A stretch of DNA of 64,000 nt, from contig NW_002060946.1 in NCBI RefSeq assembly GCF_000150275.1, positions 677,562 through 741,561 on the forward strand, given 5' to 3'. This document shows positions 26,695-63,490 of the stretch, piece after piece. The stretch's first letter is position 1; each line of letters begins with the position of its first letter. Made by a program: the position numbers and the translations under genes. The notes beneath the pieces were generated by a model. It saw nothing but the letters and a program-made list of their open reading frames with translations. It did no database searches and had not been told where the DNA came from. Source of the stretch: Trichoplax adhaerens (Eukaryota; Animalia; Placozoa).

Positions 26695-28885
26695 GTCATT
26701 CTTGTTGATAACTGGGTACGTACCGTACAGTATTGTATTTGTCTCAGACGTCCCTGACAGTGGACTATTACTCAAAAAGTGCCTTGTGTAGTACAGTACA
26801 TTACACTTAACATTACAGTACTGTGTACTGTAATGTTAAGACCCACTTCTTAGTCCTACAGTACAGTACAGTATGTTACGGTGGCCCAAGGGGACGGCGT
26901 TATGCAGAGATTATGCATCTTCCCCAATTCAGAACACCTGCCGGAGATTTTCAATCTTCTCACGTACGATGTAGTTATAGAGTAAGTGCACTGCACTTAG
27001 CTATTAGTGTTACTTGTATCACAATCAACTGCTATGGAAGATAGTCAGCGAGCGAATACTATATCACATTATCTCCTTATAGTAATCGTAACTAAATTTT
27101 TCTTAATACTATTGATCTTTTTAATTAATTACTACTCAAACAGTATTTCAAATTTTCAAATATGTGATGCTAGATCAGTTTCCATGAAAATGTCTTTCAA
27201 GTTACTTAGTTCAACTTAGGCTATGTTAGGAACATTTATTTTGAAGATTTAATGCGTCAATAATTGTGAAATTCCTTAGTATAGTGTTTGCTAAACCATG
27301 GACGCATGCTACTACTCAATGTACATGATCGCAATATGAAATAAAAGCATATCATACTATGGAAGCCGTTCTACAGAAGCGCCCAGCCTATCTAAAATAA
27401 GAGTTTATTTGAAATACTCTCCTTTTAGGGTCTCTACTCTCTCTAGGCCAGTATGACTATTTCTCTCTTTTTACTGCAGTCAGCGATGGCTACTTCTACT
27501 GTACTGTTCAGCACAGTTAGCTAATATAGTATACGTCCACTCTATACGGCCGTTCATTTGCAGTTCCACAGCCTGAACCACAGGCATAACAGGCCTGCGC
27601 ATTTTCCCGATTTTGCTGCGCACAAAAATTATTCTTGTCCGCTACTATACAAAGATATACTCGTATTTCGAATACTGTATGTAGTATTCATCTTTAGTTT
27701 TAGATTAGACTATAAATTTTGTGTACCAACAGTTGCTAAATCGTTCTAAACCGATTATCAGCAGTAGTAAACGTGACGATTGTATAATGTACAGTCAAAA
27801 TTCGGAAAAAAAGTTCATGCAAGCTGCGCGCTACTCTGCCCAAGTCTGAAGCCGACGATGCATTCACATTTAATTATACTGTACGTATACACACAGTATA
27901 CAATATACGTACAGTACTATATTACTAGACTTGATCAACAGAAATGGGAAAGTCCCTGATTTGATTTATAGTAATTATAAGATTTTATCTGAAAGTTGGC
28001 GTAACTTTAATTTTTCAATTATAAATAAAAAATTTATCTGCATCTGTTTTAAATTTTTCTCTAGATGGATTAGATAAGACATTTAGGGGCAATACATTTA
28101 TCTACTATATAGAACACTGTAATACTGTTCTACAATTTAATTTATTTATTACTTTTGCATAATAATATTGTCTAATACTGCGCAGTGAATACGACAGTAT
28201 CTCCTTTAATTTCATTTCTCATTAGATTCGAATGTGAGGGCACTACCTCTATCCCTGTAAATAACCAAGTTTTTAACACATACAGTACAGTACTTTACAT
28301 CAGGTATTGAAGTTGCATGATATAATTGGGCTGTCTGGCCAAAGTTGTCAACAAAACACAACTGTGTGAAAAACTACACTGCAAAACTGACAAGATTTGG
28401 TTGACGATTTCTACAATCTGTATTACTGTAGTTCTATAGTTCTAACTGACTTTTAAATACTGAATGATTGGTTAATTATCGCCCTTCTTTTATTACTTGT
28501 AAAGCCGTCAAGTCCTGCTATTCATTACGTGCTGTACATTAACGGTTCGTGAGTATTTTCTGGATTTTAAATACGCGTATTCCTCTAGCTTAAGTTATAG
28601 TTGCATGTCGATCCTTAAGCTGCTAGCGATTATTAATTTTAATAATTTCACTACTTTAATTTCTATGTAAAAGGTAAAAGGAAGTCTGCAAGTTATTTAA
28701 ATTCCTTATTCTTTTGTAACAAATATAGCAGTACAGCTGTAATAACATAAAACCATAAATCAATCGCTGTACACAGATTGCGATCTAACCGATGTACTGT
28801 ATGTTTTAACTATGTAAATTTATCTCTGGGTGCGCAAAGATTTTCAGGAATACAGTGTTGTTATTTGTCGTATTTCTCTGTAAAA

Positions 28886-31649: not shown

Positions 31650-34549
31650 CTAAACAAATCCGTGCGATTTCAACTTTTCTACGAGTTCACTGACATCCTC
31701 AACCTTACTTCCGGCTTGACGTACGGGGGGATCTTCCACACTTAATGTTTCCGTTCGAGGCGAGATATCTACACCCAAATCCGCTGGAGTCTTTACATCT
31801 ATCTTTTTCTTTTTTGCTTTCTGAATAAATTATTTAAGAAGAGTATATTAGAATTTACGTAATTTTTATCGCATGGCGTATTCATTCAGAAGCTATTAAT
31901 TATTCGAGTGTACGAACCATGATATTTGGTAATGTGGCATAGCGAGGTTCATTTAATCTACCCATGAAAATATAATTCACCAACAATTAGTAAACGAAAT
32001 AATCATTATAGGTTATTAATGGCGGAACGTGCCTTTTTCGTCTCAGTAGCTTGCTACGGCATACAACTTTGTACTCATAAGGTAGATTAAAGTATGTTGT
32101 ATAGATTTTGTTGATTTCATTGCAGGGTAATACTGTATTCCAATAAGGAAATTTTGTAACAACTAAAATTGATGATATGCATTAAAGAGCTATGATCTAC
32201 CTCAAATCCGCGGATACTACAGCCGGCATGTTTACTTTTATCGTTTCTAATCCACCATCAACTTCACGAATGACTTTCATACTGTCGCCATCAACTGTAA
32301 TTTCTGAGGCAAAAGTTGCCTATTGTAAAAATAATACCATAATTAATTACAACTGTTCATTTCTATATAAACTTTCAAGACGGTTTTTATATACTGTAAA
32401 TTATGTACCTGAGGCCAATCCAGTAAAGCTGCAGTTAGCTGGCCGGTTTGGTTACAATCATCATCAATGGCCTATTCAATTGCATATAATCGCAATTATA
32501 GGTTAATCCACATAGAGGGTTACCAAAAAATTATAGAACGCAGTAACGGAATTTTGAAAGGCCGGTACTATATTTAAAAAACTTGTGCAATACGCGTAGA
32601 ATATTAAGATGACGAGTCGTTTACCTGCTTGCCAACAATGATCAAGCCTACGTCCTCATCTTTAGCTAATTTACTAAAGATTTTAGCAACACCTAATGGT
32701 TCCAACGTATGGCTTTCTGGTTCAGGCACTTCCACGTGAATTGCACGATCAGCTCCCATCGCTAGAGCTGTTCTCAACGTTTCCTACAGCATTACAGACA
32801 ATGCAATATTAGTTGCAAAAATCACATGGATTGTAGGATAAAAATTGTATGTATCTTATTTGGTCTACCTGACATTGCTTAGGTCCACAGCTGATTGCAA
32901 CAACCTCTGAGGCTACTTTTTTCTCTTTAAGTCGAACTGCCTATTGATATGAATACAATAAACAGTACATGAGTCATAGATCAATCTTTTAACTTTAGTA
33001 ATTATAAAATGTTTCTGTACAAACTTCTTCAATAGCAATTTCATCAAATGGGTTCATACTGTGCTTGACGCCATCCGTTACTACTCCAGTCTTATCAGGC
33101 TTTACACGCACCTTTTAAGAAAATGATACATACGAACATCGATCAATGCTGTTTCAAGAATTGTTGAAAGTAACTCCATACAGGTATAAAAAAATTAAAC
33201 TCAGAGGTTTGTAAATATGCAAGGAAAGATAAGTGCTCGTAATTGTAGGAGAGTTGTGCTACACGTTGTGTTATTAATAGGCATCATCTTAAAGATAAAG
33301 TATTGAACTACTTATACTGTATTATTAACATTAAGATGGATTTAGGTGAAAGTTGCAATACGAATAATTTGACTACAGTCAATACTTGTATTTTACAGGT
33401 CTTGATGGTATTCATTTCACCGAATCTACTTAACAATTCGACCTTAAATACTGTAGTTTAGAAGGGTTACTATAAAACGAAAGACTCGATTCTAGTGTTT
33501 TATTCCATTAATGAAAAGCTAAGATATTTCGATATTTCGTTACATTTATGGACTAATCGAATCGGTCAGTTCTATATTTTAGTAAGAATTAATCCTTGAA
33601 TTAAATTATGCCGAATAGTAAAAAAGTATTGTGTGACTAGACACTGATAGCCAAGTAAATAAACACTAAATTAATATACTCGTTAACATTGCGGCATTGA
33701 TGAAAGTACAAATATTATCGATGGAAGGATCAGAACGGTTTGTAATACGTTATTACTGCATTTTTTACACAAGTTTTGATGACCACAATCCTCAGTATTA
33801 ATTCATGGACTATTAGAAGAAAACTGGTTTTCTTCCAGTAGTCATGATTAATCCAACTCGATATACGGTTGATATCGCCCGTAGCATCGACGTTACGGCC
33901 AGTTTCCTATCAGGCTTATCAAGTCATGCCACGAAAGAAACTTACTCAAGAATGGAAACTCCACTAGCAAATGATTTTTTCAAATCAGAATATACAAGAT
34001 CATCTGCTCTATCATTTAAACTATCTGCTACCATTAGACTAAGATCAGCAGTGAGCTGATGTACATAGAACAAGGTTTAAAGTACAGTACAAAACGTCAA
34101 CTATCTTACTAACCCATTTTTCAGTAGCTAGTATACGAGTACTGTAGTATACAGTACAACTACTTCATCGAGCATCTACTCTATTACTAATATTTTATGA
34201 CTAAAGCTTTTCTAAATTTTATGAATGCATTTGTAAGGTTGGAAAGAAGAGAATTTAGCTATAGCCATTAGTCTGCATGTTAGATAGCTCGCAAGAGAAC
34301 AAAATGACCTTATTACTACAAGGATTTGGCACAACATTGTGTCCATTGAGGGTTGAGCAGTATGCAACTGCATTGTACTTGCATACTGTTGAACTCCCAT
34401 TTTGTAATGTAACCCTTGTCCAACTGGACTCATAGAACAGTAAAGGATATCTTCAATGGTTAAAAGATTGGATTAAAATTACAAATTGAACTTACTTTAA
34501 CGGCATAATCAATGACACGCTTGCAACCAACAAGAACTCTGAGAGCCAT
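31650..34549 (-). CDS. ETFB: Electron transfer flavoprotein beta subunit, multi-exon
   Basis: Exon blocks [18 protein letters not shown]; [29 protein letters not shown]; [17 protein letters not shown]; [11 protein letters not shown]; [10 protein letters not shown]; [13 protein letters not shown]; KAKKKKID. Stop at 31650. Confidence 0.97.
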
Positions 34550-35303
34550 ATTGCTAACCGTTGCGGGGGGACGTATTAAGTGATAGATTGAACGTTGGCC
34601 GTGGCTGTCACCCAGCTTTTCGGGCTGAGGGGTTAACAGGGGTTGACTGGTTAACACCTGTTTGACTTCAACACCGTGCACAGTCATACTACTGTTGCAC
34701 AATGGACTGTATCAGCAGTTCAGCACCACGCTGCTACGGTCACAGGAGTCTAGTCGTGGGTGATTGGGCAGCTGAGCATGAGCAGTATACACTACCCGTA
34801 CAGTACTAGGACACGAACTGTACAGTACTTGACGCCCCGGGTACTGACTGTACACTACCGTATGTACTTTAGTACCTCGTAAAGCCAGTCAAACAGGATC
34901 CGATCCAGCTATTGGACATAGTCAACATACGGTGCAAAGTCCAAGTTTCACGAAATGCTTTTATACTGTACTTGTATACAGTACTTCAGTCTTCCGTCAT
35001 GTACCTCATATTAGTACAGTACAGCTTGGCGTAGATGGATTGTTAAATGTTGATATCGATACTTTGACATAAGCAATCCAGGAGAAATACGTTGATTAGT
35101 CTTCCACATCAACTCATTATATACTGTATAATCATTAATTTTCTTCTCATTTCATCCCATAATTATTGTTATTGCTGTTTTATGATATGTAGTCAGACTG
35201 GTGTTAATCTTTATTTTTCTTTTAATTGTGATTGCTGTTCTATGCCGTGTAGTCAGCCAGACGTTATGCTGGGGGGGAATTGGCCAACAATTTGCTAGCA
35301 ATT

Positions 35304-36903: not shown

Positions 36904-38153
36904 CTAATAATCACTGAGATCTCCATTAAATTCATCAATTAAATTATGATCTTCTTCAAAATGACGAAGAGCGTTCATGGTTTCGTTAATTTCGTTTAAA
37001 TCAGATTCTTTGATCAAATCGTCGTTATTCCTATGAATTTGGTATAATTATATCAATTACTAATCACTTTCCATTCAAAGATTAAAAAAATTTAACGAAA
37101 TACTCACATAGGGGAACTGTTTACGTCGATTACGCTTTGAAGGGATTGTTTCTCTAACTATACTCATAAAATAAAGACTACAGATTACTGATACGGAAAA
37201 AATTTGCGCTATAATACATATAAATTACGGCATATATTTTCAAAGCAAGAATTAAAGTATATAACTTATTTTAACTACCTGCTGCCTTTCCTCGATCTTC
37301 CTATGTAGTCTATCTAGTGCTTTTTTGCGCCTTTTCAATACCTAAAGTATATTGCAGCGCAAATAATTATATTACCTTATTACAATCTAATAGATTAATG
37401 TTAAACTCGACATAATGCAAAGATTTACAATGACTTTAGCATCTGCAAGACCAGTAAATTATTTACCTCTTTACGAGCTTTAAGCTCTTCCTCTGCTTCT
37501 TTCTTCCTTCCTCGTTCTAAGTGCTCGTTGGTAACTTTAAATATAAAAAGAAACAAATTATGCAATGATACTTTATTCAGGATGTAGAATAGTAAAATAA
37601 GGCAAATTCTGTAAGAATCAATCATTAGAATTTAGATTGCTTGTCTGATAAAGTTATTTTGTTAAATTAACTCACGTTTATCTTCTTGAGGAGGATTGTG
37701 TGCATAAGTAATATCTATGAAGTAAAATAGATGAATTCGTAATCATTAAAATGGTCATTGTATCATCCAACAATGCATCAATTCGTATTTATGTAACCAT
37801 ATCTATCATTGAATTACTGCATGATACTCTAAAATTCCAAAGACTGAATAATTATAGTAGCTACCACTTAGTGACTACAAAGAGATAAAAGTAATAATTC
37901 AAGGGGAATATTATTGAGAAAGTGATGGATATTTGGCACATTCGTAAATCCAAGTTTATGGTGACGTTTACAATTACATTATATTAGATGAATTCATACT
38001 TAATTTTGACTCTGGAGCTGCTTCTAATTTCTGTGAAATATTCAAATGCTCTAATGACGATTGAACATTGGATATTGGATCGATTGCTTTCCAAAATTGC
38101 TTCGCAAGCTCAATATCATCTTTTGAGCTACCTTCAAACGCTATTGTCGCCAT
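36904..38153 (-). CDS. HOATZ: HOATZ (C11orf88) cilia/flagella protein homologue, ~6 small exons
   Basis: Exon 1 MATIAFEGSSKDDIELAKQFWKAIDP resembles the HOATZ motif VFAGSSEQDANLAKQFW. Charged coiled-coil exons follow (EHLERGRKKEAEEELKARKE / VLKRRKKALDRL). Stop at 36904. Confidence 0.75.
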
Positions 38154-40233: not shown

Positions 40234-41861
40234 TCAATAAAGAATTAAATCTACTACACCAAACAAGAGGGATAAGGCAATAACGGTATAGCCAGTCTTA
40301 TAAAGCGTCGGTAGATTGAATCCTTTACCCATATCCCATATCTAAATGTTATAAATTGAAGATTGATTACAACTATTAGATCAAGGATGTATATAGCTAT
40401 TTTATCGAAAAATGAATCTTAGAGTAGCTAGCTATGTACAAGTAAAGTCCACGTTAATATCTTACCAAGTGACGGACTCCATTTATCGCGTGATAATATA
40501 ATGGAAAAATAAAGCCACATTTAAGTGTAAAGGGTACTATGGCTGGAAGGGTTTTCCAAACTTCGATATGTTCTGCTAACGTACCACTAGACGACATGGT
40601 GTATATAGCGAAAGTAGCAGCATCTAAGATAATCATCAGTGACAATTGATTATTACTTTTCACTAGTAATATTGTGGAACGTGATATAAAAGTTAATAGT
40701 TTTATTGATAATAAAGATGGAAATGTATTAGGAGCAACAGGTCTATAATTTTAGATAAGCATACTAATAATAACACGTACATGCCGATAAAATCATTCCA
40801 CTTGCGCGATGGGTGATTGACATCATCGAAGTAAGCTGAGGCCTAAAGATGGCAGCAATATAAAGAGAGAAGTAAGTTAGGAGTTAGTTTACTAAGTGCC
40901 TCTAACAGAGAAAGGCTAAAAGAAATCATCTTGAATAGCGAGATCAACATGATAGGAACATACTTATAAATAGTTAAATGAGGCGACATTGGGCGATTTA
41001 AACGCTTATTCTTTTTGAAGAAGTTATCTTCTGACGTACTAGTCGCCGTGGACATTGCAATCCTAATAAAAAGAGTCGTGAGTAGGAATAAAATGTTATA
41101 TCTACACTATCTTTAGGACTTGAAGATTTATTGAAATATTTTCAGTATCGTCCCACAGTAAAAGATCAATAGTCTAGGTGGAGTAGGCGCACAAATACAT
41201 ACGCGTATAGGCGTATGTATTACTGTACTGTACTATCGATAAAAGGTAGAATGATCTACATTATTAGTCATCGTATTTACGTAACGCCAATGCTTGTTAG
41301 CAACAACTGATTTATTTTAAAAGTACTACGTTACATGAAATTTGATATAAACAATATATACATATAACCGAAGTATAGATTGGCTTTAAGGTAGTAAATC
41401 TGGCGTTCAATTTGGAATTTGTTGATTACAGTTATTACCACACGAACCGTTGTCATCTGAGTTCGTAGTGATGTTTCAGTTGAAAAAGTAACTATCGATT
41501 ATGTGGCATCACATTGTTGACATGATTGTTAAAGAACATGCTATAGGTAAGGATATAACATTAACATCTCTATACTGATAGCTATAGTTAGGGCAATCCA
41601 TAATATATATACAAAAGCTAAGGATGAATTGAAGGATATTTGCCTCAATTACAATAATTGAATTTTACCTTCGAGGAGCTACAGATGTCAATCGGACGAC
41701 CGACAATGAGCTGCCACGCATAAGAAATAGCCGACTTGTGCTAATAAGGATGAAATAATATTCTTTAAAAGTCGTTTCAAATCTTAATTATCAATCAATT
41801 GACATTACGGCAAAGAATATTGACAAAGTTATAGCATTTACCATATTAGATTGACGGCCAT
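40234..41861 (-). CDS. SDHC: Succinate dehydrogenase cytochrome b560 subunit, 6 exons
   Basis: Arg-rich presequence exons, then KNKRLNRPMSPHLTIYK / PQLTSMMSITHRASG / YHAINGVRHL / IWDMGKG. Stop at 40234. Confidence 0.95.
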
Positions 41862-41899
41862 GTTTGACTCTCTGGGGGTTAAAGTCAGGTTGTGGTCCT

Positions 41900-42410
41900 G
41901 TACCCTTCCGTACAGTACTGTAGTGCTGTAAAAAAAAGGGTTGATCACAACACTCGTAGCAGCTAATCAAAGAAGAATTTATGTCTTTATATTTCCTATA
42001 TCGCGATGTGCCATACCATACAGTTCACTAAGTATGTCGAGTTATGGACTACGTACAGTACAGTAGTAGTACGTGCTACAGTACATGTACTGTAGTCTCA
42101 CAGATGCTTGCTTTCGCAGGATTACTCTAGTCAAATCCTTATCTGCTATACTTATTTGTTGGAGTTAACTACGTAAATGTCATGGTCCAAGTACTGTAAG
42201 GGCCCGGGCAATGTACTGTACTGTACTGTACTGTACTGTACAGTACGAGAAAACTTCTACAGTACATTTCTACGTACTGTACTGTACTGTACAGTGTACA
42301 AGTGTCTACAGTACAGTACAATCTACAGTTCATTTACTGTAGGCATACTGTACTGTACACTGAGTACAGTACTTACTGTACAGTATACTGTACATGTAGT
42401 TTATACAGTA
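41900..42410. repeat. (GTACT/TACAG)n low-complexity array upstream of SDHC
   Basis: e.g. gtactgtactgtactgtactgtactgtacagtac at ~42213-42246, with many further TACAGTAC/GTACTGTA copies. Confidence 0.85.
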
Positions 42411-42688
42411 TGTTGTGGCAAACTATCCTAGGTTTTGAGCACAACATAAGAGTATACAGTATAACCTATCGATGTTGTGGCCAACTATCCTAGATTTTCT
42501 AGATAGGTTTTGAGCACAACATACGAGTATACTGTATAACCTATAGATGTTGTGGCCAACTATCCTAGGTTTTCCTAGATTGGTTTTGACCACAACATAC
42601 GAGTATATAACCTATAGATGTTGTGGCCAACTATCCTAGGTTTTCCTAGATTGGTTTTGACCACAACATACGAGTATATAACCTATAT
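42411..42688. repeat. Tandem array of four 62-75-bp hairpin-forming units
   Basis: Units start at 42411, 42473, 42548 and 42619. Core: TGTTGTGGCCAACTATCCTAGG-TTTT-CCTAGATTGGTTTTGACCACAACA. Confidence 0.9.
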
Positions 42689-43973
42689 ATATACAAAATT
42701 CTTTCATCACTCGATATTATTCGTTGCCCAAGCATCTGCCTTTACGTCATTGCCTTCTAAGCATAGGCTTGAGATGACGAATAACTTGATGAGATCGTCA
42801 AGTCTATGATATAGAAACGAAATTGTCTCAGAGCTCAACTGAATCATTGTTGTCGTCTCAACCGTGCCGTGTAATACATTACAATATACCATACTGTCCA
42901 ACCGGCGTTCTTATTAATTTTTTGAATCAAACATCTACTTTGCATAGGTCGTGACTTCCTGTTATTTAATGAAATCTTATAACTGATAGATGCCTTTCTG
43001 CAGCCTGATACTGTTGCCAGTCTAAACGTACAATGCAATTGTTACGATGCGTAAGCTCGTCCTAATTATAACTTTAAAAGGATACTTTTATATTATGTGC
43101 ACCGGGAGTTTCTGACGAGACTATAAAAGGCTGGTGCCTGAAGATTCCTTTTTAGTTCGTTAGTCGGTTAGATAGTCAACTAGTTTTTCAATTGATATTT
43201 AATTGTAAAGACTATAATCTTGGGTGCCAAGATTCCTTCAGTAATAAATGATAGTAAATCTCTGACTATCTCGTCTACATCATCTGTGACGTTATAATTG
43301 TACCATAGTATTCGGTCGTTGGAACTGAATTATTTGGTGATATAGTTAATCTCGCCTCCTTAAGTTAGTAAGTGGCGTTCTCCGCAAGGATTGGCGTGTG
43401 TAGACTACTTTGTCACTAGTGGTGTGTGACAGCAATATACATCTGAACCATAGTACATTCACATTAGATGACATACACAAAATATTTAAGGGTGTTTATT
43501 ATTCGATGAATATATTCATTGAGCAAATCAAAAAGGGTATTCAAATCTACGACAAAAAGTATGTCGTATTAGATATGTATTGAGAACGAATAAAGCATCA
43601 CAGTTAATTGGTGTATTCAACAAAGTTATATACAAATCCGGTAGAGAAACAGTTGACTAATCATTATTTCAAGTCAGTACTGAATTCGAATTAGTGCCGT
43701 ATCCATTTACTTTATTGCGTGGATCTTGTTTTAAGGCTCTCCACACATTGTATCCGGCATTTACAGTACTTTAATTTATTAATTCTGCATTGCAGCAATT
43801 TCAAGTCGGTTACCGTTTAATTCATGGCGTATTATGGTACATATACAAGCCTGGTAACATCTATCGTATACCTGGTGATGGATATGTTAGATACACTTCA
43901 ATTTGTTAGCTCTAGAGTAATTTAGCTGAAAAGTGTTAATAAAATTATATACGCGCAGAGCGCGATTAAAATG

Positions 43974-45751
43974 TTACCGCTCTAACTTTAAATCGTTTAA
44001 TTTCTTTGTTATATCTACTTCCGTCTTATTATTACTGCATTTAGCATTTTTATATCCTTTAGTAACTGGATAGAAAATTTCTCTATTTCCTTTCCTTAGA
44101 TAGGTTTCCTTGCTTACGTTTGTAGTTGATTTTGTAACACCTATTGATTTGGCATTTGTACAGCTAGCAACTTTTTCGGTGTCAACTTTAGCAGTCTGAG
44201 CGGGCCTATGCTGCTTACTCATATCTGTTTTATTTACTATTGATTTAGAAGTTTGGGTAGCACTTTGATTAATAACATTTAAGCCTAAAGCATCTTGGTC
44301 TTTTAACAATTTGGCGTAGACCAGTTGTAATAGTTTAACATCAGTTAGTGCTCCATGCCCCAGCGATCGCGAAGACTTATCAATATTAAAGCGATCACAT
44401 AACGAATCAAGTGAGGCTGGTTGTCTCGGATATAATTTTCTAGCCATCAGCATTGTATCAATAACACGTTCGAAAGATATTTCAGGTATATTCAGTTTTT
44501 GAAATTCGTTATTGATAAATTTGATATCGAAATGGCCATTATGAATGATAAGGGTATCTTCTTGAATAAAGTCACGAAAGTCTTGTACTATCCCATCGAA
44601 AGTAGGAAATCCTTCTAGAAATTTGTTCGATAGATGATGTACCTCAAAGGCCCTTTCTGAGACTGGAAATTTCGGATTGATATAGCATTGGAATGTTCGG
44701 CTAGTTGGTTGATGATCGATTAATTCAAGGCAACCAATTTCGATTATTCGGTGGCCAGTTCTTACGCTTAAACCAGTAGTTTCGGTATCCAATACCACCT
44801 CTCTAAGAGGTGATAAGTTGCTGAAAGATGTTAATTGTCAAATTAGCAAAGATTAAAATGTCAGGTAGGTACAGTACTTACTGCACTATTATGGCTAAAT
44901 GGAATAGAAAGATCATTATTTTGGCTATTCTATCAACGATTAAAGTCAAAATTATTCCATATTTGCATTGCTCCTCATAGGCAACAGACGGGTTCTCTCC
45001 GGTTATTACAAATTACGACTATGTATTCACAATTTTATTTTTTCATCTTAAGCCTATTTTAAACTTTGCCGAGATATTCACATAGTATCAAAGTTCATTA
45101 CAGAGTAATTCAGTATCGGGCTCTTTTGTTGATGTCTCTTGATGAACGTCGGGACATTAAGGGTTCACTAATCTCTTTTTCGTAAGGCATTGATATAAAA
45201 TGCTGAGTACTGAAAAGTTAATTTTGCACTGACTTTGCACTGGCTCGCTTACGACTTAGTAATACAGTACAAGCGCTCGGCTGAAAATATCTTTACATTT
45301 GAGTTCAATTTTTAATTGACTTTAGTTCCAATGCGATCTGATTCAGGTCATAAATTAGTACAATTTGATCGAGACCATTAACTAAGAGTATTAAAAGAGT
45401 ATATCAGGATAAATGCTCTATAAATTCTAAAATTTATGAATTAAAGTCGTTAGACCATAGTTGCAACTTCATGACCATTGATCAGTCAGCAAACAGCTCG
45501 GACATGGTGCTCAAAAGGTACAAAACTTGAGGAGCTAAGTTGATGACAAATTCATCTTAGGAAACCGAAAGCTTTCAGGCTCGGGCTAAATTCGATCTAG
45601 TATAATCTAACTTCTACGGCTAAATTTCTGCTATATCATATTACCTTTTAGGAGGATCACCAGACATCTTTTCATGGAATATGATTGTCAAATTGCATGC
45701 ATGTCGCATAAATCTCGAGGTCTTTCTTATACATGCAATTTGTGTAAGCAT
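43974..45751 (-). CDS. dnaQ: Bacterial-type DNA polymerase III epsilon (DnaQ) DEDDh 3'-5' exonuclease; predicted 2-exon gene
   Basis: Exon 2 (44820-43974) has REVVLDTETTG (ExoI), HRIIEIG, YINP, IHNGHFD (ExoII), IDTMLMAR, SLDSLC and HGALTD (ExoIII). Predicted exon 1 (45751-45645; 107 nt, phase 2, AG|GTAAT donor) joins in frame. The domain call is firm; exon 1 is inferred. Confidence 0.85.
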
Positions 45752-47129
45752 TCCTACCACCTGGAGTACTGTACAGTAGACATCTAATGAAAGTAAAAAT
45801 GACTTTGAAAGCGATAGTTCAAGCTATGCCGTATCATATTACCGCGCTGCAATACTGCAATCAATATCACGTACTGTACGCTAGTTGTACTGTACAGTGT
45901 AGAGTATACACTACACTACCGTACAATATTCAATATTCTATACGTACTGTACTGTACGTGATAGCAACAGACGGGATTCGTAACCTGCATACTGCATACT
46001 TACGGCAGGAACTAGTATGCATTTTCAAGGAAATCACAGCATGATGCTATACCATATCTACTGCAGTTTACTAATATGTGATCAGTAGTTAATTACATGT
46101 GCATATCCCTATAGTAGTGTTAAATGATTATAATTCTCGATTTTATCTTAAGCGACGATAGCACATTAGAGGATCTACCGTCTATTGCTGTATTGAATAA
46201 AGCAAATTGTTTATTAGAATTATATTCTGCCTCAAATAACGTAGTGCTAATACTGCCATAATAATTACTCTAAATACAGTAATAGTCGTCACCGCACAGT
46301 ACTACATCAAATATAGACCGCATCGGCGTAGAACGTTTGAGTAAGTAAGTAAGCACTAACTCTTAAATGCCGTAGCAACCAACCCGATTAACATTCTATA
46401 CTGTGATCGATGTATCTATAGATCACAGCTGACTGAATATTCAAACCTCACTACTGTATAGGGTAAAGCTCAATTGTATAGGTCGCTTTCTAGTTAATAA
46501 GAGCACACTCAGATTTATGCAGCCATGTTATTGCTGTCTTTCTAGGATATACGTAGTTATTCCTTTTAAACAGCATAGCAACACCACCACATAAAATTTT
46601 CGAACAAATATTACAGAGATGGTTAATAGTTAAAAGTACATACTGTAGGTCCAAAAATAGGTATAATGAGAACTCCTTTTTAATTTCTTATTATTTCCAA
46701 AAATTGAATATTTAATTAAGAGTCTATAACATTCCTATACTCATTCACTTTCGTAAATATTTTTACATTTAAAATTCTGAAATTTAGCATCCACACATGT
46801 GGCATGTACAACACAGTCGATAGTAACGTCTGATATAATCGGAACTGACATGTGTCTATATACAGCATAAAATAATGTAAGTACTGTATTTAAAGTAATT
46901 TAAACAACTGCATGCTTCGTAGTGAAATAAAATTATGGAACAAAACTAGGCTTTCTGCCCTAAAGAAATTAATTATCAGACGAGCAAACACGTATACGTA
47001 TATATATATATATACACTGAATTTACTTTTTGTTTAGATCTCGTAACTTTATGCATACTCCCAAATAATTAGTTTAAGATAACGGATTATGCATATTAAT
47101 CGATACTATTGTTATATCATAGTGCAAAT

Positions 47130-50100
47130 TTACTCAAGTGTGTAGTTAAAAAGGGTTGTCGATCTCCAACTAAGAAGACGCACTACTACGAATGATAACA
47201 GTAGAACTCCCAAACCAATGAAGAAAATACCGGTCTGAAACGAAAATTTTTAAATTGATTAACAAAAATCAATAATAAGATAGATCCTAATCATGAAAAC
47301 ATCTTACTTGCAATGAAGGATTTGGGACAAGAAACATCTTTAAATCAACAGATTGCCACCTAAAAATATCAAATTTAATTTTAGTCTCATCTTTGGAACA
47401 TAAATGTCGATCTATAGTCAGGTCTAATTTATAGAATGCAACAAGCATACCTGCTTTCAGCCCAAGTTGAATAATTTTTAGATTTATAGTCTTTAAGTAA
47501 AAATGCAGGAGATACAGCAGGCGAATAATAAACGGTACCCCTATAGCACACGTTTTTAAAATCTTGTCCTTGAAACCATAAATAATTATATGCCTAGTAC
47601 AAAGCAATTTCATTAGGGGGATTTCAAGGTATCTTAATCAGCCTAAATTTTAACATAGTTCATTTAATACTTACAGAGTTGTCTGACGTATTAGATTTAC
47701 AATTGCTCTGCTTGGTTACATCAGCCAACTGATTTCCAGTAAAATACATCATTAAATGGTTAGTTAAATTCGTGACTTGATTAGGGCTTTGAGATACTCC
47801 CACCATACGAGGATACGCTGATGATGCTATTTAATTTAAATTAAAATCAACTGTTAAGCTCTATATCCATTCTAAGGATTGTAGCCATCTTTTGCGATCT
47901 ACTTACGTAAATTTTTAGCATTACTATTCGAAACAACCTGCTGAAAGAGGGTGCATGATGCATTCTGAAGGAAACAGTGTAGCAACTCTGAGGTCTATAA
48001 TAAAACATGCGAAAAATATTAATATTGTACCGGTAATATTATTAACGCAATTTGAACGGAGTAATTACTACTAAGAGCTTACCATATCTTCATCTGCTGT
48101 TATTTTCGATAGGTCAGGAGTAGGATTAGAATCAGAAGCCAACATATAAAGAGTTCTTGCAACAGTTGTTGCCAATCTGGTTAGATGCTGCAAACAAGTG
48201 TGGAGTCAGCCCGGTTACAGTTCTTACATTGTAGTTACCTTTATTTTTTAGCAAGTAGATTTAGGATCGAATTCATACCTTTGATAATGAATTTGGATCT
48301 CGCAATCCCTGTGAAGATAGCTTATCCATTACTTGGTTCAAAGAATCATAATGGCTGTTATAATAGCTAAAAAACGAAAGTAGCTTTCAATTCGATAATA
48401 TTTTCTCAATCGTATGAAACGATATCTATAGCGAAGGTTATCAAATTTATCTTACGCATTCGTAAAATTTTTTTTATGATCAGTTAATACGAGGCCAGAT
48501 AGTCCACTATCTTTACGAAGAAACCTTTGTACTGAAGCTGGTGGAAGAGGCAAATCATTGGATGCCTTACTAATATTAACTCCAGCACCAGTTCCCGCTT
48601 TTACCAATGCAGCGAAAAAAGCATCATTCTAAAACGGTAGACCCGAAATTTCTTGTGATACATGATTGATCATGCACAGATAAAAATTAAAGAATCAAGA
48701 GAATAAAATAATTTTGATACATACCCTCGATTTATCACCACTAGATGGGTCAAAGTGAGCCCATAAGGATTTTTCATCTTCCAGTCCTACCTGTCTAAGT
48801 TCTAAAAATTGACCAATGTTTTTCAATGTAATATTAGCCGGCCAATCCTAAAATGAATCAAGTCAAATATTAGAAAGTTGAATTGTTAACACTCTGTTAA
48901 TGCTAATTTGCCTTAGAATTGCCTGGAAACATTCCACTCTCCATATCATATACCATCCTTGAGGATCCAATGTAGTCCCAGCTTTCCTAAATTTAATATA
49001 AATTCATCGTTATGGTAATAAATTATCACTAGATGCATTGATAAAGTCAATGATCGCATACTCCTTGAAAAAATGCAAACATAATAGGCTTTTTCGGCTT
49101 CGTTAGCTTATTCTAGAGAAATTAAAATAGTAAGTAGTTAGCATAGCAAACAATAGTCGCTGACTATAAATAAAGTTTAAACAAACCGAATTTTTGGCTT
49201 TACCCAAGGCATATGCTGCAGATAATAAAGTTATGAAGCCTGAAGCATCATTATCAGTTCCAGGTGCAAAGTTGTAAAACTGGGATATGGAATCCAACTA
49301 TAAGTTTAAAAGTTAGCTTAATCATTAATTTATGACTAGTACTGCTTTGATAACATTGCTATAACATTAAACACTAAACCGATAGCAATGATAATACATT
49401 ACAGAAACATTTTTTGTACTTTGTGCGTAAATGTATACATTGAAGAGATCTCGTAAATTAAGCTATACTGTACTGTAGTACTGGGTAGGCTATCAATGAC
49501 TGATATACCTGTGCCGCTGCAATTATGAGTTCCCTTTCTTTAAGAGGGTTATTCATTGGATATAGTGTCGACCATACATTACTATCGCCAAGGGGATCAC
49601 AAAATCCTATTACGTAGTATTAAAATAGCCAAATTATGCGTTAATTCTAATGCTTCCCTATACAGATTCTTACAATATTCATACCTCCAGATGTTAATGA
49701 ACCAGCAATATTTCTACGCATGCAAACTTCAGTATTAGAAGGAGTAAACATGAAATCTCCCATTTGTACCGCACACAACGGATAAATTAGCTCTCCCTTG
49801 CTTGTAGGCATATTATGCTTAAGGTAGCACTACAATGAGATTTTGTTCAGAGGTTTTAGTTTAATACCGGATACGGTAGCATTATGTTACGTAAGTTTCT
49901 ATATCTACTAATAAATCTCGGCTAGTACGCTTGTAACTCATATATACGTATAGGATATAGAACCTGTTTTAATCTTTGAATGTCATCCTCCATATAAACA
50001 CGGAATATAGGAAAATCGAAACTTTTGTATAACATTCCACTTCCCTTTTTAGTGCAAAATACATCGATAAAGCGCATTAAAGTAACTGAAAGCAATACCA

Positions 50101-51779: not shown

Positions 51780-52135
51780 TGTACGATACAGTACAGTGCG
51801 ATATAACAGTATAGGACACTACTGTACCGTGCTGATAAAAGTTGACTAAGGTTTACACTAGGCTGGATTCTAACTGTAAGCACTGCAGATACAGTACTAC
51901 AGTACAGTACTGTACTGTAATAAGCAAATACAGTACTGTACACTGTAGCGTACATCTGTATAGCAGTACTGACGTCATACTGTACAGTACCTTACTGTAC
52001 AGACAGTTACAGTACTGTACTGTAAACGTTATACTGTACTGTACTGTCTGTACTGCATAAGTACTAGACTGGACTGGATCGGACCAAGCTGGACTTAGTC
52101 TTATAGTATGCAATACTGACTCACACTACAGTACA
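51780..52135. repeat. (GTACT/TACAG)n array in the NCSTN/BBIP1 divergent intergenic region
   Basis: Dense tacagtac/gtactgta copies, e.g. 51890-51920 and 52008-52052. Confidence 0.85.
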
Positions 52136-63198: not shown

Positions 63199-63490
63199 GG
63201 TACAGTACAGTATGACATGAAGCGTTTCAATTGTTTTTGTGTCAAACGTACAGTACTGTAGCTCTAGTCAAACAACACAACAACCGATCGATGTTCACAC
63301 TGAGTACAGTACACTGAGTACAGTACACTGAGTACAGTACACTGAGTACAGTACAGAATTGTACTGTAGAGCATGAACTCCTATAAAGGATCTACAGTAC
63401 AGTACTGTACTGTACTGTACTGTACCGTACTGTACAGTACATACTGTACACTTCGCAACGATTTGCAAGTACATTTGTACAGTACAGTTC
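63199..63490. repeat. (GTACT/TACAG)n array including a 14-bp tandem repeat (acactgagtacagt x4, ~63297-63354)
   Basis: Seen directly; lies upstream of the LEM gene on the minus strand. Confidence 0.85.

What the first reader, a model, noticed from the sequence alone, without database searches (positions are those of the whole stretch)
43974..45751. Intron-bearing alphaproteobacterial-like DnaQ with a mitochondrial-presequence-like first exon
Seen: an intact DEDDh exonuclease with DnaQ-specific motifs (REVVLDTETTG...GHRIIEIG...YINP...SLDSLCDRFNIDKSSR..HGAL), flanked by the animal genes SDHC and NCSTN, so it is not a contaminant contig. The catalytic domain is uninterrupted. A phase-compatible upstream exon encodes MLTQIACIRKTSRFMRHACNLTIIFH, which is basic and has no acidic residue in the first 26 aa. 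It sits directly below a TACAGTAC array. The usual DnaQ tail is replaced by ~105 Lys/Thr/Ser-rich residues. Known: animals lack Pol III, and placozoans carry Rickettsiales endosymbionts. Inference: a horizontally acquired proofreading nuclease retargeted to mitochondria for mtDNA repair or replication.
Basis: partly seen in the sequence, partly recalled or inferred. Interest (0 to 1): 0.8.

Follow-up and report, generated by a model that had tools for sequence, protein, structure and literature searches.

The report
Bacterial proofreading nuclease gene in Trichoplax
The placozoan Trichoplax carries, between two ordinary animal genes, a spliced and selectively maintained copy of the bacterial DNA-polymerase-III proofreading exonuclease (DnaQ/epsilon). 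It has lost the part that docks onto the bacterial polymerase, so it most likely works as a free-standing DNA-trimming enzyme, possibly in mitochondria.

Summary
On the minus strand, 43974-44819 is one uninterrupted exon encoding a complete epsilon-type DEDDh exonuclease (NCBIfam NF004316, 221 bits against a cut-off of 196). The AlphaFold core superposes on E. coli epsilon at 1.5 A. The exon has no start codon, because the bacterial start is now CTT, so it needs the 826-nt intron (44820-45645) and exon 1 (45646-45751).

The window is Trichoplax adhaerens. The gene is single-copy and lies between nicastrin and SDHC in both the H1 and H2 assemblies. I found no paper that discusses it.

A 59%-identical gene on gene-poor, AT-rich metagenome contigs has its acceptor at the same position and phase. 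Domain dN/dS against it is about 0.2. Both proteins lack the alpha-binding C-terminus and carry unrelated disordered tails. No DnaE was found in the genome.

Trees place the pair firmly in Alphaproteobacteria. The best tree puts it inside Rickettsiales, among Midichloriaceae, the family of placozoan symbionts, but an AU test does not reject a position outside (p = 0.39).

Mitochondrial import is plausible but untested. The N-terminus is basic and amphipathic, and the two H1/H2 differences in it are both synonymous.

Verdict: an old, domesticated bacterial gene; function inferred.

The parts
43974..44819 (-). Exon 2: the whole exonuclease domain, the tail and the TAA stop; 281 codons. It has no in-frame ATG before the Exo I motif, and the codon at the bacterial start position is CTT.
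44286..44804 (-). DEDDh exonuclease core (P0121 residues 42-214). It carries Exo I DTETTG (44772-44789), Exo II HNGHFD (44526-44543) and Exo III HGALTD (44340-44357).
   Evidence: Pfam and NCBIfam; alignment to E. coli epsilon; AF2 pLDDT above 92; Foldseek TMt 0.90, rmsd 1.5 A to 2gui/1j53
44280..44297 (-). QDALGL, at the position of the bacterial beta-clamp-binding motif (Q-x-x-L-x-L). It is a probable relic and is not kept in the sister gene.
   Evidence: P0002 sequence
43977..44279 (-). Tail of about 101 residues, rich in K/T/N/S and basic (pI 9.8), predicted disordered. It replaces the alpha-binding C-terminal segment of epsilon.
   Evidence: Profile match ends at 209/234; pLDDT below 55; composition; tail identity to P0002 18%, dN/dS 0.6-0.8
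44820..45645 (-). Spliceosomal intron of 826 nt, GT-AG, phase 2. It contains an alternative phase-compatible donor at 44881 next to a GTACTGTAC copy.
   Evidence: same junction in the JGI (P0001) and H2 (P0121) models; acceptor position and phase shared with L001
45646..45751 (-). Exon 1 coding part. It has three in-frame ATGs: M1 at 45751, M15, and M29 at 45667. The M1-M28 stretch is a basic, amphipathic N-terminal extension.
   Evidence: the two H1/H2 differences in the extension (45701, 45677) are synonymous
45766..45957 (.). Cluster of five GTACAGTAC/GTACTGTAC palindromic copies immediately 5' of exon 1. Similar clusters lie 5' of SDHC and nicastrin, so it is a promoter-type array.

Best explanation
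This is a nuclear placozoan gene that came from an alphaproteobacterial dnaQ, most likely of a Rickettsiales/Midichloriaceae-like intracellular bacterium. The transfer happened before two divergent placozoan-type lineages split.

Shown:
- The gene kept the complete epsilon exonuclease fold and all five DEDDh catalytic residues, and the domain is under purifying selection.
- It lost the bacterial start codon and the C-terminal peptide that tethers epsilon to Pol III alpha. The host genome has no detectable alpha.
- It acquired a host 5' exon behind a promoter-type motif array, a phase-2 intron, and a fast-evolving disordered tail.

Inferred:
- The protein is a free-standing, Mg-dependent 3'->5' DNA exonuclease. 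It would trim single-stranded or mispaired 3' ends in trans, as the isolated epsilon-186 domain does.
- If translation starts at the first ATG, the basic amphipathic presequence sends it to mitochondria (my estimate about 40-45%). There it could edit or resect mtDNA ends.
- If translation starts at Met-29, it is a cytosolic or nuclear TREX-like nuclease.
For: Identity:
- NF004316 scores 221 bits against a cut-off of 196.
- E. coli epsilon is the best solved relative, with catalytic residues aligned.
- AF2 core pLDDT is above 92, and Foldseek gives TMt 0.90 and rmsd 1.5 A to epsilon-186.

Nuclear and old:
- The gene is single-copy in the genome.
- Animal genes lie on both sides, in the same order in the independent H2 assembly.
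- There is no ATG in exon 2, so the intron is obligatory.
- No remnants of bacterial neighbour genes were found.
- The sister gene P0002/L001 is 59% identical in protein and 73% in DNA. Its contig is gene-poor and AT-rich. Its acceptor has the same position and phase, and the Leu/Leu/Arg codon changes upstream of the old bacterial start are synonymous.
- Domain dN/dS is 0.18-0.22 with dS above 1.3.

Origin:
- The pair falls on the alpha side of the alpha/gamma split (99*; 100/100).
- In the careful tree it is nested in the Rickettsiales clade (98/87*) and in a clade of the Cyrtobacter (Midichloriaceae) family (87/95).
- Placozoan symbionts are Midichloriaceae (PMC6784892).

Loss of Pol III docking:
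- The profile match stops at 197-209 of 234 positions in both placozoan-type proteins. It reaches 225-232 in the bacterial controls.
- No PF07733 (DnaE) match was found in the genome, while the bacterial control genomes were detected.

N-terminus:
- Net charge +4, with no acidic residue in the first 26 aa.
- Hydrophobic moment of 0.86 for IRKTSRFMRHA, reached by 1.3% of shuffles.
- Two synonymous and no non-synonymous H1/H2 differences in the extension.
- The evidence-based MAKER annotation of H2 starts at M1.
- SDHC next door has the same layout: a presequence on a short first exon followed by a phase-2 intron.
Against: - No transcript, proteomic or localisation data were available here. The start codon (M1 against M29) and the use of the 45645 donor rest on two gene predictions.
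- The nearest motif copy ends only 15 nt upstream of M1, whereas the SDHC ATG lies about 190 nt below its nearest copy. The transcription start could therefore fall downstream of M1.
- The candidate exon 1 on L001 is basic, but it is not significantly similar to the Trichoplax exon 1 (96 of 500 shuffles score as well).
- Rickettsiales nesting is not significant by the AU test (p = 0.386). AT-rich composition could attract the placozoan branch to AT-rich Rickettsiales.
- The organism behind L001 is unknown. Its flanks match nothing in Trichoplax.
- TIGR01406's stricter cut-off is narrowly missed (219 against 222.7).
- Enzyme activity is inferred, not measured.
Confidence: 0.8

Rival explanations
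1. Same domesticated gene, but not mitochondrial. Translation starts at Met-29 (the JGI model), or the nearer donor at 44881 is used. The enzyme then acts in the cytosol or nucleus as a TREX-like nuclease, for example clearing stray DNA from the intracellular symbionts.
For: - The JGI model P0001 starts at MSGDPPK.
- Met-29 has A at -3.
- A motif copy lies only 15 nt above M1.
- The 44881 donor is phase-compatible.
- TREX1 and TREX2 appear among the fold matches.
- The Trichoplax tail is basic.
Against: - The H2 MAKER model starts at M1.
- The two differences in the extension are both synonymous.
- The extension is amphipathic and free of acidic residues.
- The basic tail is not conserved: the sister tail has pI 4.9.
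Confidence: 0.35
2. An ancient eukaryotic gene inherited from the mitochondrial ancestor and lost almost everywhere else, not a placozoan-specific transfer.
For: - A jakobid (Andalucia godoyi) has a bacterial-type DEDDh protein, described as homologous to DnaQ, in its predicted mitochondrial proteome (PMC7050145).
- The placozoan stem branch is long (1.3 substitutions per site).
- The AU test does not force the pair inside Rickettsiales.
Against: - Among the best 120 hits out of 5171, the only eukaryote-sourced protein is Trichoplax itself. The next-best hit after P0002 is bacterial.
- By eye, the Andalucia protein lacks the epsilon-specific motifs: it has DVEASG where epsilon has DTETTG, and no SLDxLCxRF.
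- The ML tree puts the pair inside a Midichloriaceae-family clade.
- This reading would require loss in every other animal lineage.
Confidence: 0.06
3. Symbiont contamination, a chimeric assembly, or a recent dead insertion of symbiont DNA.
For: - Rickettsial DNA is present in the Trichoplax project (PMC3641634).
- The GC content of the gene (36%) is not diagnostic.
Against: - The locus is identical, with the same synteny, in the Sanger H1 and Illumina H2 assemblies.
- The bacterial start codon is lost and an intron is required.
- The best bacterial identity is only 49-54%, even in 47 genomes of the Midichloriaceae family.
- dN/dS is 0.2 against a 59%-identical sister gene.
- No bacterial neighbour genes are present.
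Confidence: 0.03

Closest known systems
Bacterial DNA polymerase III epsilon subunit (DnaQ; NCBIfam NF004316 / TIGR01406; E. coli epsilon-186, PDB 1J53, 2GUI, 2IDO)
   Same: Same fold (TMt 0.90, rmsd 1.5 A, 40% identity). The same five DEDDh catalytic residues. Passes the NF004316 equivalog cut-off. A Q-x-x-L-x-L relic sits at the clamp-motif position.
   Different: - Encoded in an animal nucleus with a spliceosomal intron and a host 5' exon.
- Lacks the C-terminal alpha(PHP)-binding segment.
- No Pol III alpha in the genome.
- Carries a 36-residue N-terminal extension and a disordered tail of about 100 residues.
- It therefore cannot be a Pol III core subunit.
Reported bacteria-to-Trichoplax gene transfers (Driscoll et al. 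2013, PMC3641634: BPL_N_1/2, DapF, MurA, RsmE, PhrB_1-4, GNAT_1-2, MhpC)
   Same: Bacterial-type genes lying among animal genes on large scaffolds. Some are of rickettsial affinity, and two (BPL_N) have acquired introns.
   Different: DnaQ is not in that list. It is a replication-proofreading module, not a metabolic or envelope enzyme. Its intron lies upstream of the whole bacterial reading frame and supplies the start codon.
Plant DPD1 (organelle-targeted DEDDh 3'-5' exonuclease related to DnaQ/TREX; PMC12292046)
   Same: A stand-alone or fused DnaQ/TREX-like exonuclease encoded in the nucleus and acting on organelle DNA. This is a working analogue for the mitochondrial reading.
   Different: According to that paper, DPD1 is structurally closest to TREX1/2, not to proteobacterial epsilon. 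Its origin and lineage are different. No sequence comparison was made here.
Animal TREX1/TREX2
   Same: DEDDh fold and autonomous 3'->5' DNA exonucleases (Foldseek E about 1e-8 to 1e-9).
   Different: Only 20-25% identity, with a dimeric architecture and different insertions. The placozoan protein is unambiguously epsilon-type.

Membership tests
DNA polymerase III epsilon (DnaQ), proteobacterial type | Sequence passes the curated equivalog model | tested here: met
   NF004316 scores 221 bits (H1 exon 2) and 220.9 bits (H2 P0121) against a cut-off of 196. TIGR01406 scores 219-219.6 against 222.7, a narrow miss.
DNA polymerase III epsilon (DnaQ), proteobacterial type | DEDDh catalytic residues (Exo I D-x-E, Exo II D, Exo III H-x4-D) | tested here: met
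   DTETTG, HNGHFD and HGALTD align with E. coli D12/E14, D103 and H162/D167. These positions are invariant columns in the 52-sequence alignment.
DNA polymerase III epsilon (DnaQ), proteobacterial type | Epsilon exonuclease fold | tested here: met
   AF2 core pLDDT above 92. Top Foldseek hits are 2gui, 2ido and 1j53, with TMt 0.89-0.90 and rmsd 1.5-1.7 A.
DNA polymerase III epsilon (DnaQ), proteobacterial type | C-terminal segment that binds the PHP domain of Pol III alpha | tested here: not met
   The profile match ends at 209/234 in Trichoplax and 197/234 in P0002. The bacterial controls reach 225-232/234. The tail is unrelated and predicted disordered.
DNA polymerase III epsilon (DnaQ), proteobacterial type | Partner Pol III alpha (DnaE) present in the same genome | tested here: not met
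   PF07733 gave no match in the 105.6-Mb assembly, while 10 bacterial control genomes were detected.
DNA polymerase III epsilon (DnaQ), proteobacterial type | 3'->5' exonuclease activity and proofreading in the replisome | not testable with these tools
   Needs a biochemical assay.
Functional horizontally transferred gene in an animal nucleus | Physically linked to host genes in independent assemblies | tested here: met
   The NCSTN-DnaQ-SDHC order is found in H1 (window) and in H2 (L225). The two loci are 99.4% identical.
Functional horizontally transferred gene in an animal nucleus | Phylogenetic nesting in a bacterial donor clade, with no vertical eukaryotic relatives | tested here: inconclusive
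   The alphaproteobacterial side is strongly supported. The Rickettsiales/Midichloriaceae nest appears in the ML tree but is not significant by AU.
Functional horizontally transferred gene in an animal nucleus | Eukaryotic gene structure and purifying selection | tested here: met
   Obligatory GT-AG intron. Acceptor position and phase shared with L001. Domain dN/dS 0.18-0.22.
Functional horizontally transferred gene in an animal nucleus | Transcription and splicing demonstrated | not testable with these tools
   No RNA-seq access. The only support is the H2 model, which comes from an evidence-based MAKER run.
Mitochondrially imported protein | Cleavable N-terminal presequence that is positively charged, amphipathic and free of acidic residues | tested here: inconclusive
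   The composition and the hydrophobic moment fit. However, no validated predictor was run, the start codon is unproven, and no significant conservation with the L001 candidate exon was found.

The most novel reading that the evidence does not exclude
Placozoans recruited a symbiont-derived Pol III epsilon as a mitochondrial, trans-acting 3'->5' editing or excision nuclease. It would work alongside the alphaproteobacterial-type MutS1/MSH1 that Trichoplax still targets to mitochondria (PMC12292046). This would be an animal counterpart of the plant DPD1-MutS1 pairing. It also echoes the adjacent coaE-dnaQ-mutS gene order seen in a Midichloriaceae genome.
Probability: 0.15. Interest if true: 0.8.

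Novelty: new member of a known kind. Interest (0 to 1): 0.55.

Why it matters
Bacterial genes that an animal has truly domesticated are few. Those reported for Trichoplax are metabolic, envelope or photolyase enzymes. This one is a piece of the bacterial replisome, cut loose from its polymerase and kept under selection in an animal that has lived with Midichloriaceae symbionts for a long time.

It offers a clean case of how a prokaryotic gene acquires a promoter, a start-codon exon and an intron. It also gives a directly testable idea about extra DNA-end editing in the large, unusual placozoan mitochondrial genome, or about handling of symbiont DNA.

The gene is in public annotations but, as far as the searchable literature shows, undiscussed.

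Tried and rejected
- Exon 1 conservation. I looked for a conserved exon 1 on the sister contig L001. There is a phase-2 ORF of 47 codons ending in CAAAG|GTAA (nt 371-513). It is basic, but its similarity to the Trichoplax exon 1 is no better than chance (96 of 500 shuffles), so I do not count it as evidence.\n- Synteny and organism of L001. Its flanks match nothing in the window or in the Trichoplax genome. The GTACAGTAC motif is not enriched there. The placozoan identity of L001 is therefore inferred only from the gene tree, the shared acceptor, the tail architecture and the gene-poor AT-rich context.\n- Remnants of bacterial neighbour genes (coaE, mutS and others) around either locus: none found.\n- Spliced transcript contigs for the H2 protein: only the genomic locus was returned. 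The H1 protein gave nothing.\n- The ESM Atlas search only repeated 'bacterial Pol III epsilon'.\n- Literature. There is no mention of TRIADDRAFT_55196. Trichoplax+DnaQ and placozoa+HGT+Pol III returned nothing relevant. Driscoll 2013 does not list the gene, and its supplements are not held.\n- The first tree put the pair at the unresolved base of the alpha group. Only after adding Midichloriaceae-family genomes did it nest there.\n\nSteps left out:\n- The joined (spliced) H1 protein was not built or searched. The word search already covers relatives at 50% identity or more, and the exhaustive search returns no taxonomy.
Full report
WHAT IS THERE

On the minus strand, 43977-44819 plus a TAA stop at 43974-43976 is a single open exon of 281 codons.
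- It hits Pfam RNase_T at 6e-30.
- It passes the NCBIfam equivalog model for DNA polymerase III epsilon: NF004316, 221 bits against a cut-off of 196. It misses the stricter TIGR01406 by three bits.
- The best solved relatives by sequence are E. coli epsilon chains at 2e-37. DTETTG, HNGHFD and HGALTD align with the catalytic D12/E14, D103 and H162/D167.
- An AlphaFold2 model of the full-length H2 protein has a core (residues 42-214) at pLDDT 92-98. That core superposes on the E. coli epsilon exonuclease domain with TM 0.90 and rmsd 1.5 A.
- Residues 1-40 and 220-317 have low confidence and no predicted secondary structure.

GENE STRUCTURE

Exon 2 has no in-frame ATG before the Exo I motif. The codon at the position of the bacterial start (M-R-E-V/I-V-L-D-T-E) is CTT.
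- Eight bases further upstream is a good acceptor, TCTTTCAG|C.
- The exon therefore cannot be translated without an upstream exon.
- The donor CTAAAAG|GTAAT at 45646/45645 gives an 826-nt phase-2 intron.
- It joins an exon with three in-frame ATGs: 45751 (M1), M15, and 45667 (M29).
- A second phase-compatible donor exists at 44881, which would give MIFLFHLAIIV-H.

WHOSE GENE

The word search finds the exon as TRIADDRAFT_55196 of Trichoplax adhaerens (P0001, 289 aa). That model uses the same intron but starts at M29.
- Its 90% cluster also holds RDD46033.1, 'DNA polymerase III subunit epsilon [Trichoplax sp. H2]' (P0121).
- The H2 annotation came from MAKER with transcript evidence (PMC6057997).
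- The H2 locus (L225) has nicastrin upstream, SDHC downstream, and a gene span of 1778 nt, the same as 43974-45751 here.
- In the window, SDHC exons (40454-41055), a HOATZ-like exon (37974-38153) and nicastrin exons (48452-49297) are confirmed by Pfam.
- The gene is single-copy in the 105.6-Mb assembly.
- GC (0.36) and GC3 (0.28) are host-like.
- The gene is thus already in public annotation. I found no paper that mentions it. The one systematic study of bacterial genes in this genome lists twelve transfers without it (PMC3641634).

A SECOND, DIVERGENT COPY ELSEWHERE

The only hit closer than bacteria is P0002 (278 aa, 59% identity). It is encoded on two nearly identical metagenome contigs, L001 and L002.
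- L001 is 2.8 kb with 32% GC. It has no other ORF above 63 codons and no remnants of bacterial genes.
- Its coding DNA is 73% identical to the window.
- The reading frame continues upstream of the old bacterial start as E-L-P-P-L-R-E, against N-L-S-P-L-R-E in Trichoplax. The Leu, Leu and Arg codon differences are synonymous.
- That upstream frame stops at TATTTAG|G, an acceptor at the same position and phase as in Trichoplax.
- P0002 also loses the profile match after position 197 of 234 and continues into a low-complexity tail of about 108 residues.
- Between the two genes, the domain has dN/dS of 0.18-0.22 with saturated dS (1.3-1.5). The tails share 18% identity, have dN/dS of 0.6-0.8, and have opposite charge (pI 9.8 against 4.9).
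- I read L001 as the orthologue in another placozoan-type lineage. Its organism is not established: its flanks match nothing in Trichoplax.

ORIGIN

Bacterial relatives reach only 41-54% identity. This holds in 81 Rickettsiales genomes and in 47 genomes of the family of Candidatus Cyrtobacter comes, which NCBI places in Ca. Midichloriaceae. That family gives the highest scores, up to 193 bits.
- With 111 rows, the pair (99*) lies on the alphaproteobacterial side of a 99* alpha/gamma split, but unresolved at the base.
- Adding 118 unnamed best hits produced no sequence that breaks its long branch.
- A careful LG+C20 tree of 72 rows made it sister to Cyrtobacter (98/65).
- The careful tree of 93 labelled rows places it as follows:
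  - inside a clade that holds all 60 Rickettsiales rows (98/87*);
  - inside a 26-row clade of 23 Midichloriaceae-family rows (87/95);
  - inside a 14-row subclade (86/90).
- An AU test of the best tree that keeps Rickettsiales together without the pair costs only 6.1 log-likelihood units (p = 0.386). The Rickettsiales origin is therefore favoured, not demonstrated.
- All these sequences come from AT-rich genomes, so compositional attraction is possible.
- The result is nevertheless suggestive, because the symbionts found in placozoans (Grellia incantans, RETA1) are Midichloriaceae (PMC6784892).
- The 49-53% identity and the long stem rule out a recent copy of the present symbiont's gene.

WHAT IT CAN AND CANNOT DO

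Epsilon is held in the Pol III core by its C-terminal peptide, which binds the PHP domain of alpha. This is established knowledge, and PDB 5FKU and 5M1S appear among the hits.
- That segment is absent from both placozoan-type proteins, while Cyrtobacter and Wolbachia epsilon match the profile to positions 225-232.
- No DnaE domain was found in the genome, although the search detected it in ten bacterial control genomes.
- QDALGL (44280-44297) aligns with the clamp-binding hexapeptide, and its Q is a near-invariant column. It is not kept in P0002, so I treat it as a relic.
- The protein therefore cannot be a replisome subunit.
- The isolated epsilon exonuclease domain is an active 3'->5' exonuclease on its own (established for E. 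coli epsilon-186). The conserved active site and the purifying selection argue that this activity is what is retained.
- Activity itself is inferred.

WHERE IT ACTS

The 28 residues before M29 have four net positive charges and no acidic residue until position 27. They contain an 11-residue window (IRKTSRFMRHA) with a hydrophobic moment of 0.86, reached by 1.3% of shuffles.
- Between H1 and H2, the two substitutions inside this stretch (45701, 45677) are both third-position synonymous changes. With only two events this is a hint and no more.
- SDHC next door encodes its presequence (MRGSSLSVVRLTSVAPR) on a short first exon followed by a phase-2 intron, the same layout.
- Against this, the JGI model starts at M29. 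The nearest GTACAGTAC copy ends 15 nt above M1, whereas the SDHC ATG lies about 190 nt below its nearest copy.
- The L001 candidate exon 1 is not significantly similar.
- No targeting predictor or expression data were available.
- I put mitochondrial import at roughly 40-45%.

PRECEDENTS

- Plant DPD1 is a nuclear-encoded, organelle-targeted DEDDh exonuclease related to DnaQ/TREX. It degrades organelle DNA and is fused to MutS1 in many green plants.
- The same paper lists two mitochondrially targeted alphaproteobacterial-type MSH1 proteins in Trichoplax (PMC12292046).
- A jakobid has a bacterial-type DEDDh protein, described as homologous to DnaQ, in its predicted mitochondrial proteome (PMC7050145). 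By eye it lacks the epsilon-specific motifs.

VERDICT

The Rickettsiales source is favoured but not significant. The mitochondrial retargeting remains a reasonable, untested hypothesis.

The gene is already annotated but apparently undescribed. It adds an unusual member, a replisome proofreader turned free nuclease, to the known set of bacterial genes domesticated by placozoans.

Noticed in passing
window 26791-28293, 34082-35022, 41225-42372, 45766-45957, 51902-52044, 63200-63485: The 9-mer GTACAGTAC (reverse complement GTACTGTAC) occurs 49 times against 0.39 expected. The copies form six clusters, partly as 5-nt-phased tandem arrays. Three clusters lie just 5' of the consecutive minus-strand genes SDHC, DnaQ and nicastrin. 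This looks like a placozoan promoter-region signature. An earlier first-reader note on another piece of this genome describes the same 'palindromic ACTGT/ACAGT arrays' at gene starts.
   Followed up: partly
window 41666-41717 (-) and 41055 (-): The SDHC presequence (MRGSSLSVVRLTSVAPR) sits on its own short first exon. It is joined by a phase-2 intron to the exon beginning (R)IAMSTATSTSEDNFF. This is the same exon layout as the DnaQ gene next door.
   Followed up: no
L194 (Candidatus Cyrtobacter comes contig JARGYT010000060.1) 997-4224: In this Midichloriaceae genome, dnaQ lies between coaE and mutS, overlapping both. The dnaQ-mutS adjacency is of interest given the mitochondrial MutS1-type MSH1 of Trichoplax.
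   Followed up: no
window 40974-43973 compared with L225: The DnaQ-SDHC intergenic region, which holds the motif arrays, differs between Trichoplax H1 and H2 at 13.5% of aligned positions, mostly indels. The DnaQ intron and exon 2 differ at 0.24%. The arrays therefore evolve very fast.
   Followed up: no
window 37974-38153 (-): An exon matches the cilia- and flagella-associated protein HOATZ-like family (PF17664, 1e-8), downstream of SDHC.
   Followed up: no
G000:C1414:6429059-6429511, G000:C1411:6552332-6552790 and other places: Nine further RNase_T (DEDDh) matches occur in the Trichoplax genome. Two are complete uninterrupted domains of 198 and 283 open codons. I did not examine whether they are ordinary animal exonucleases.
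   Followed up: no
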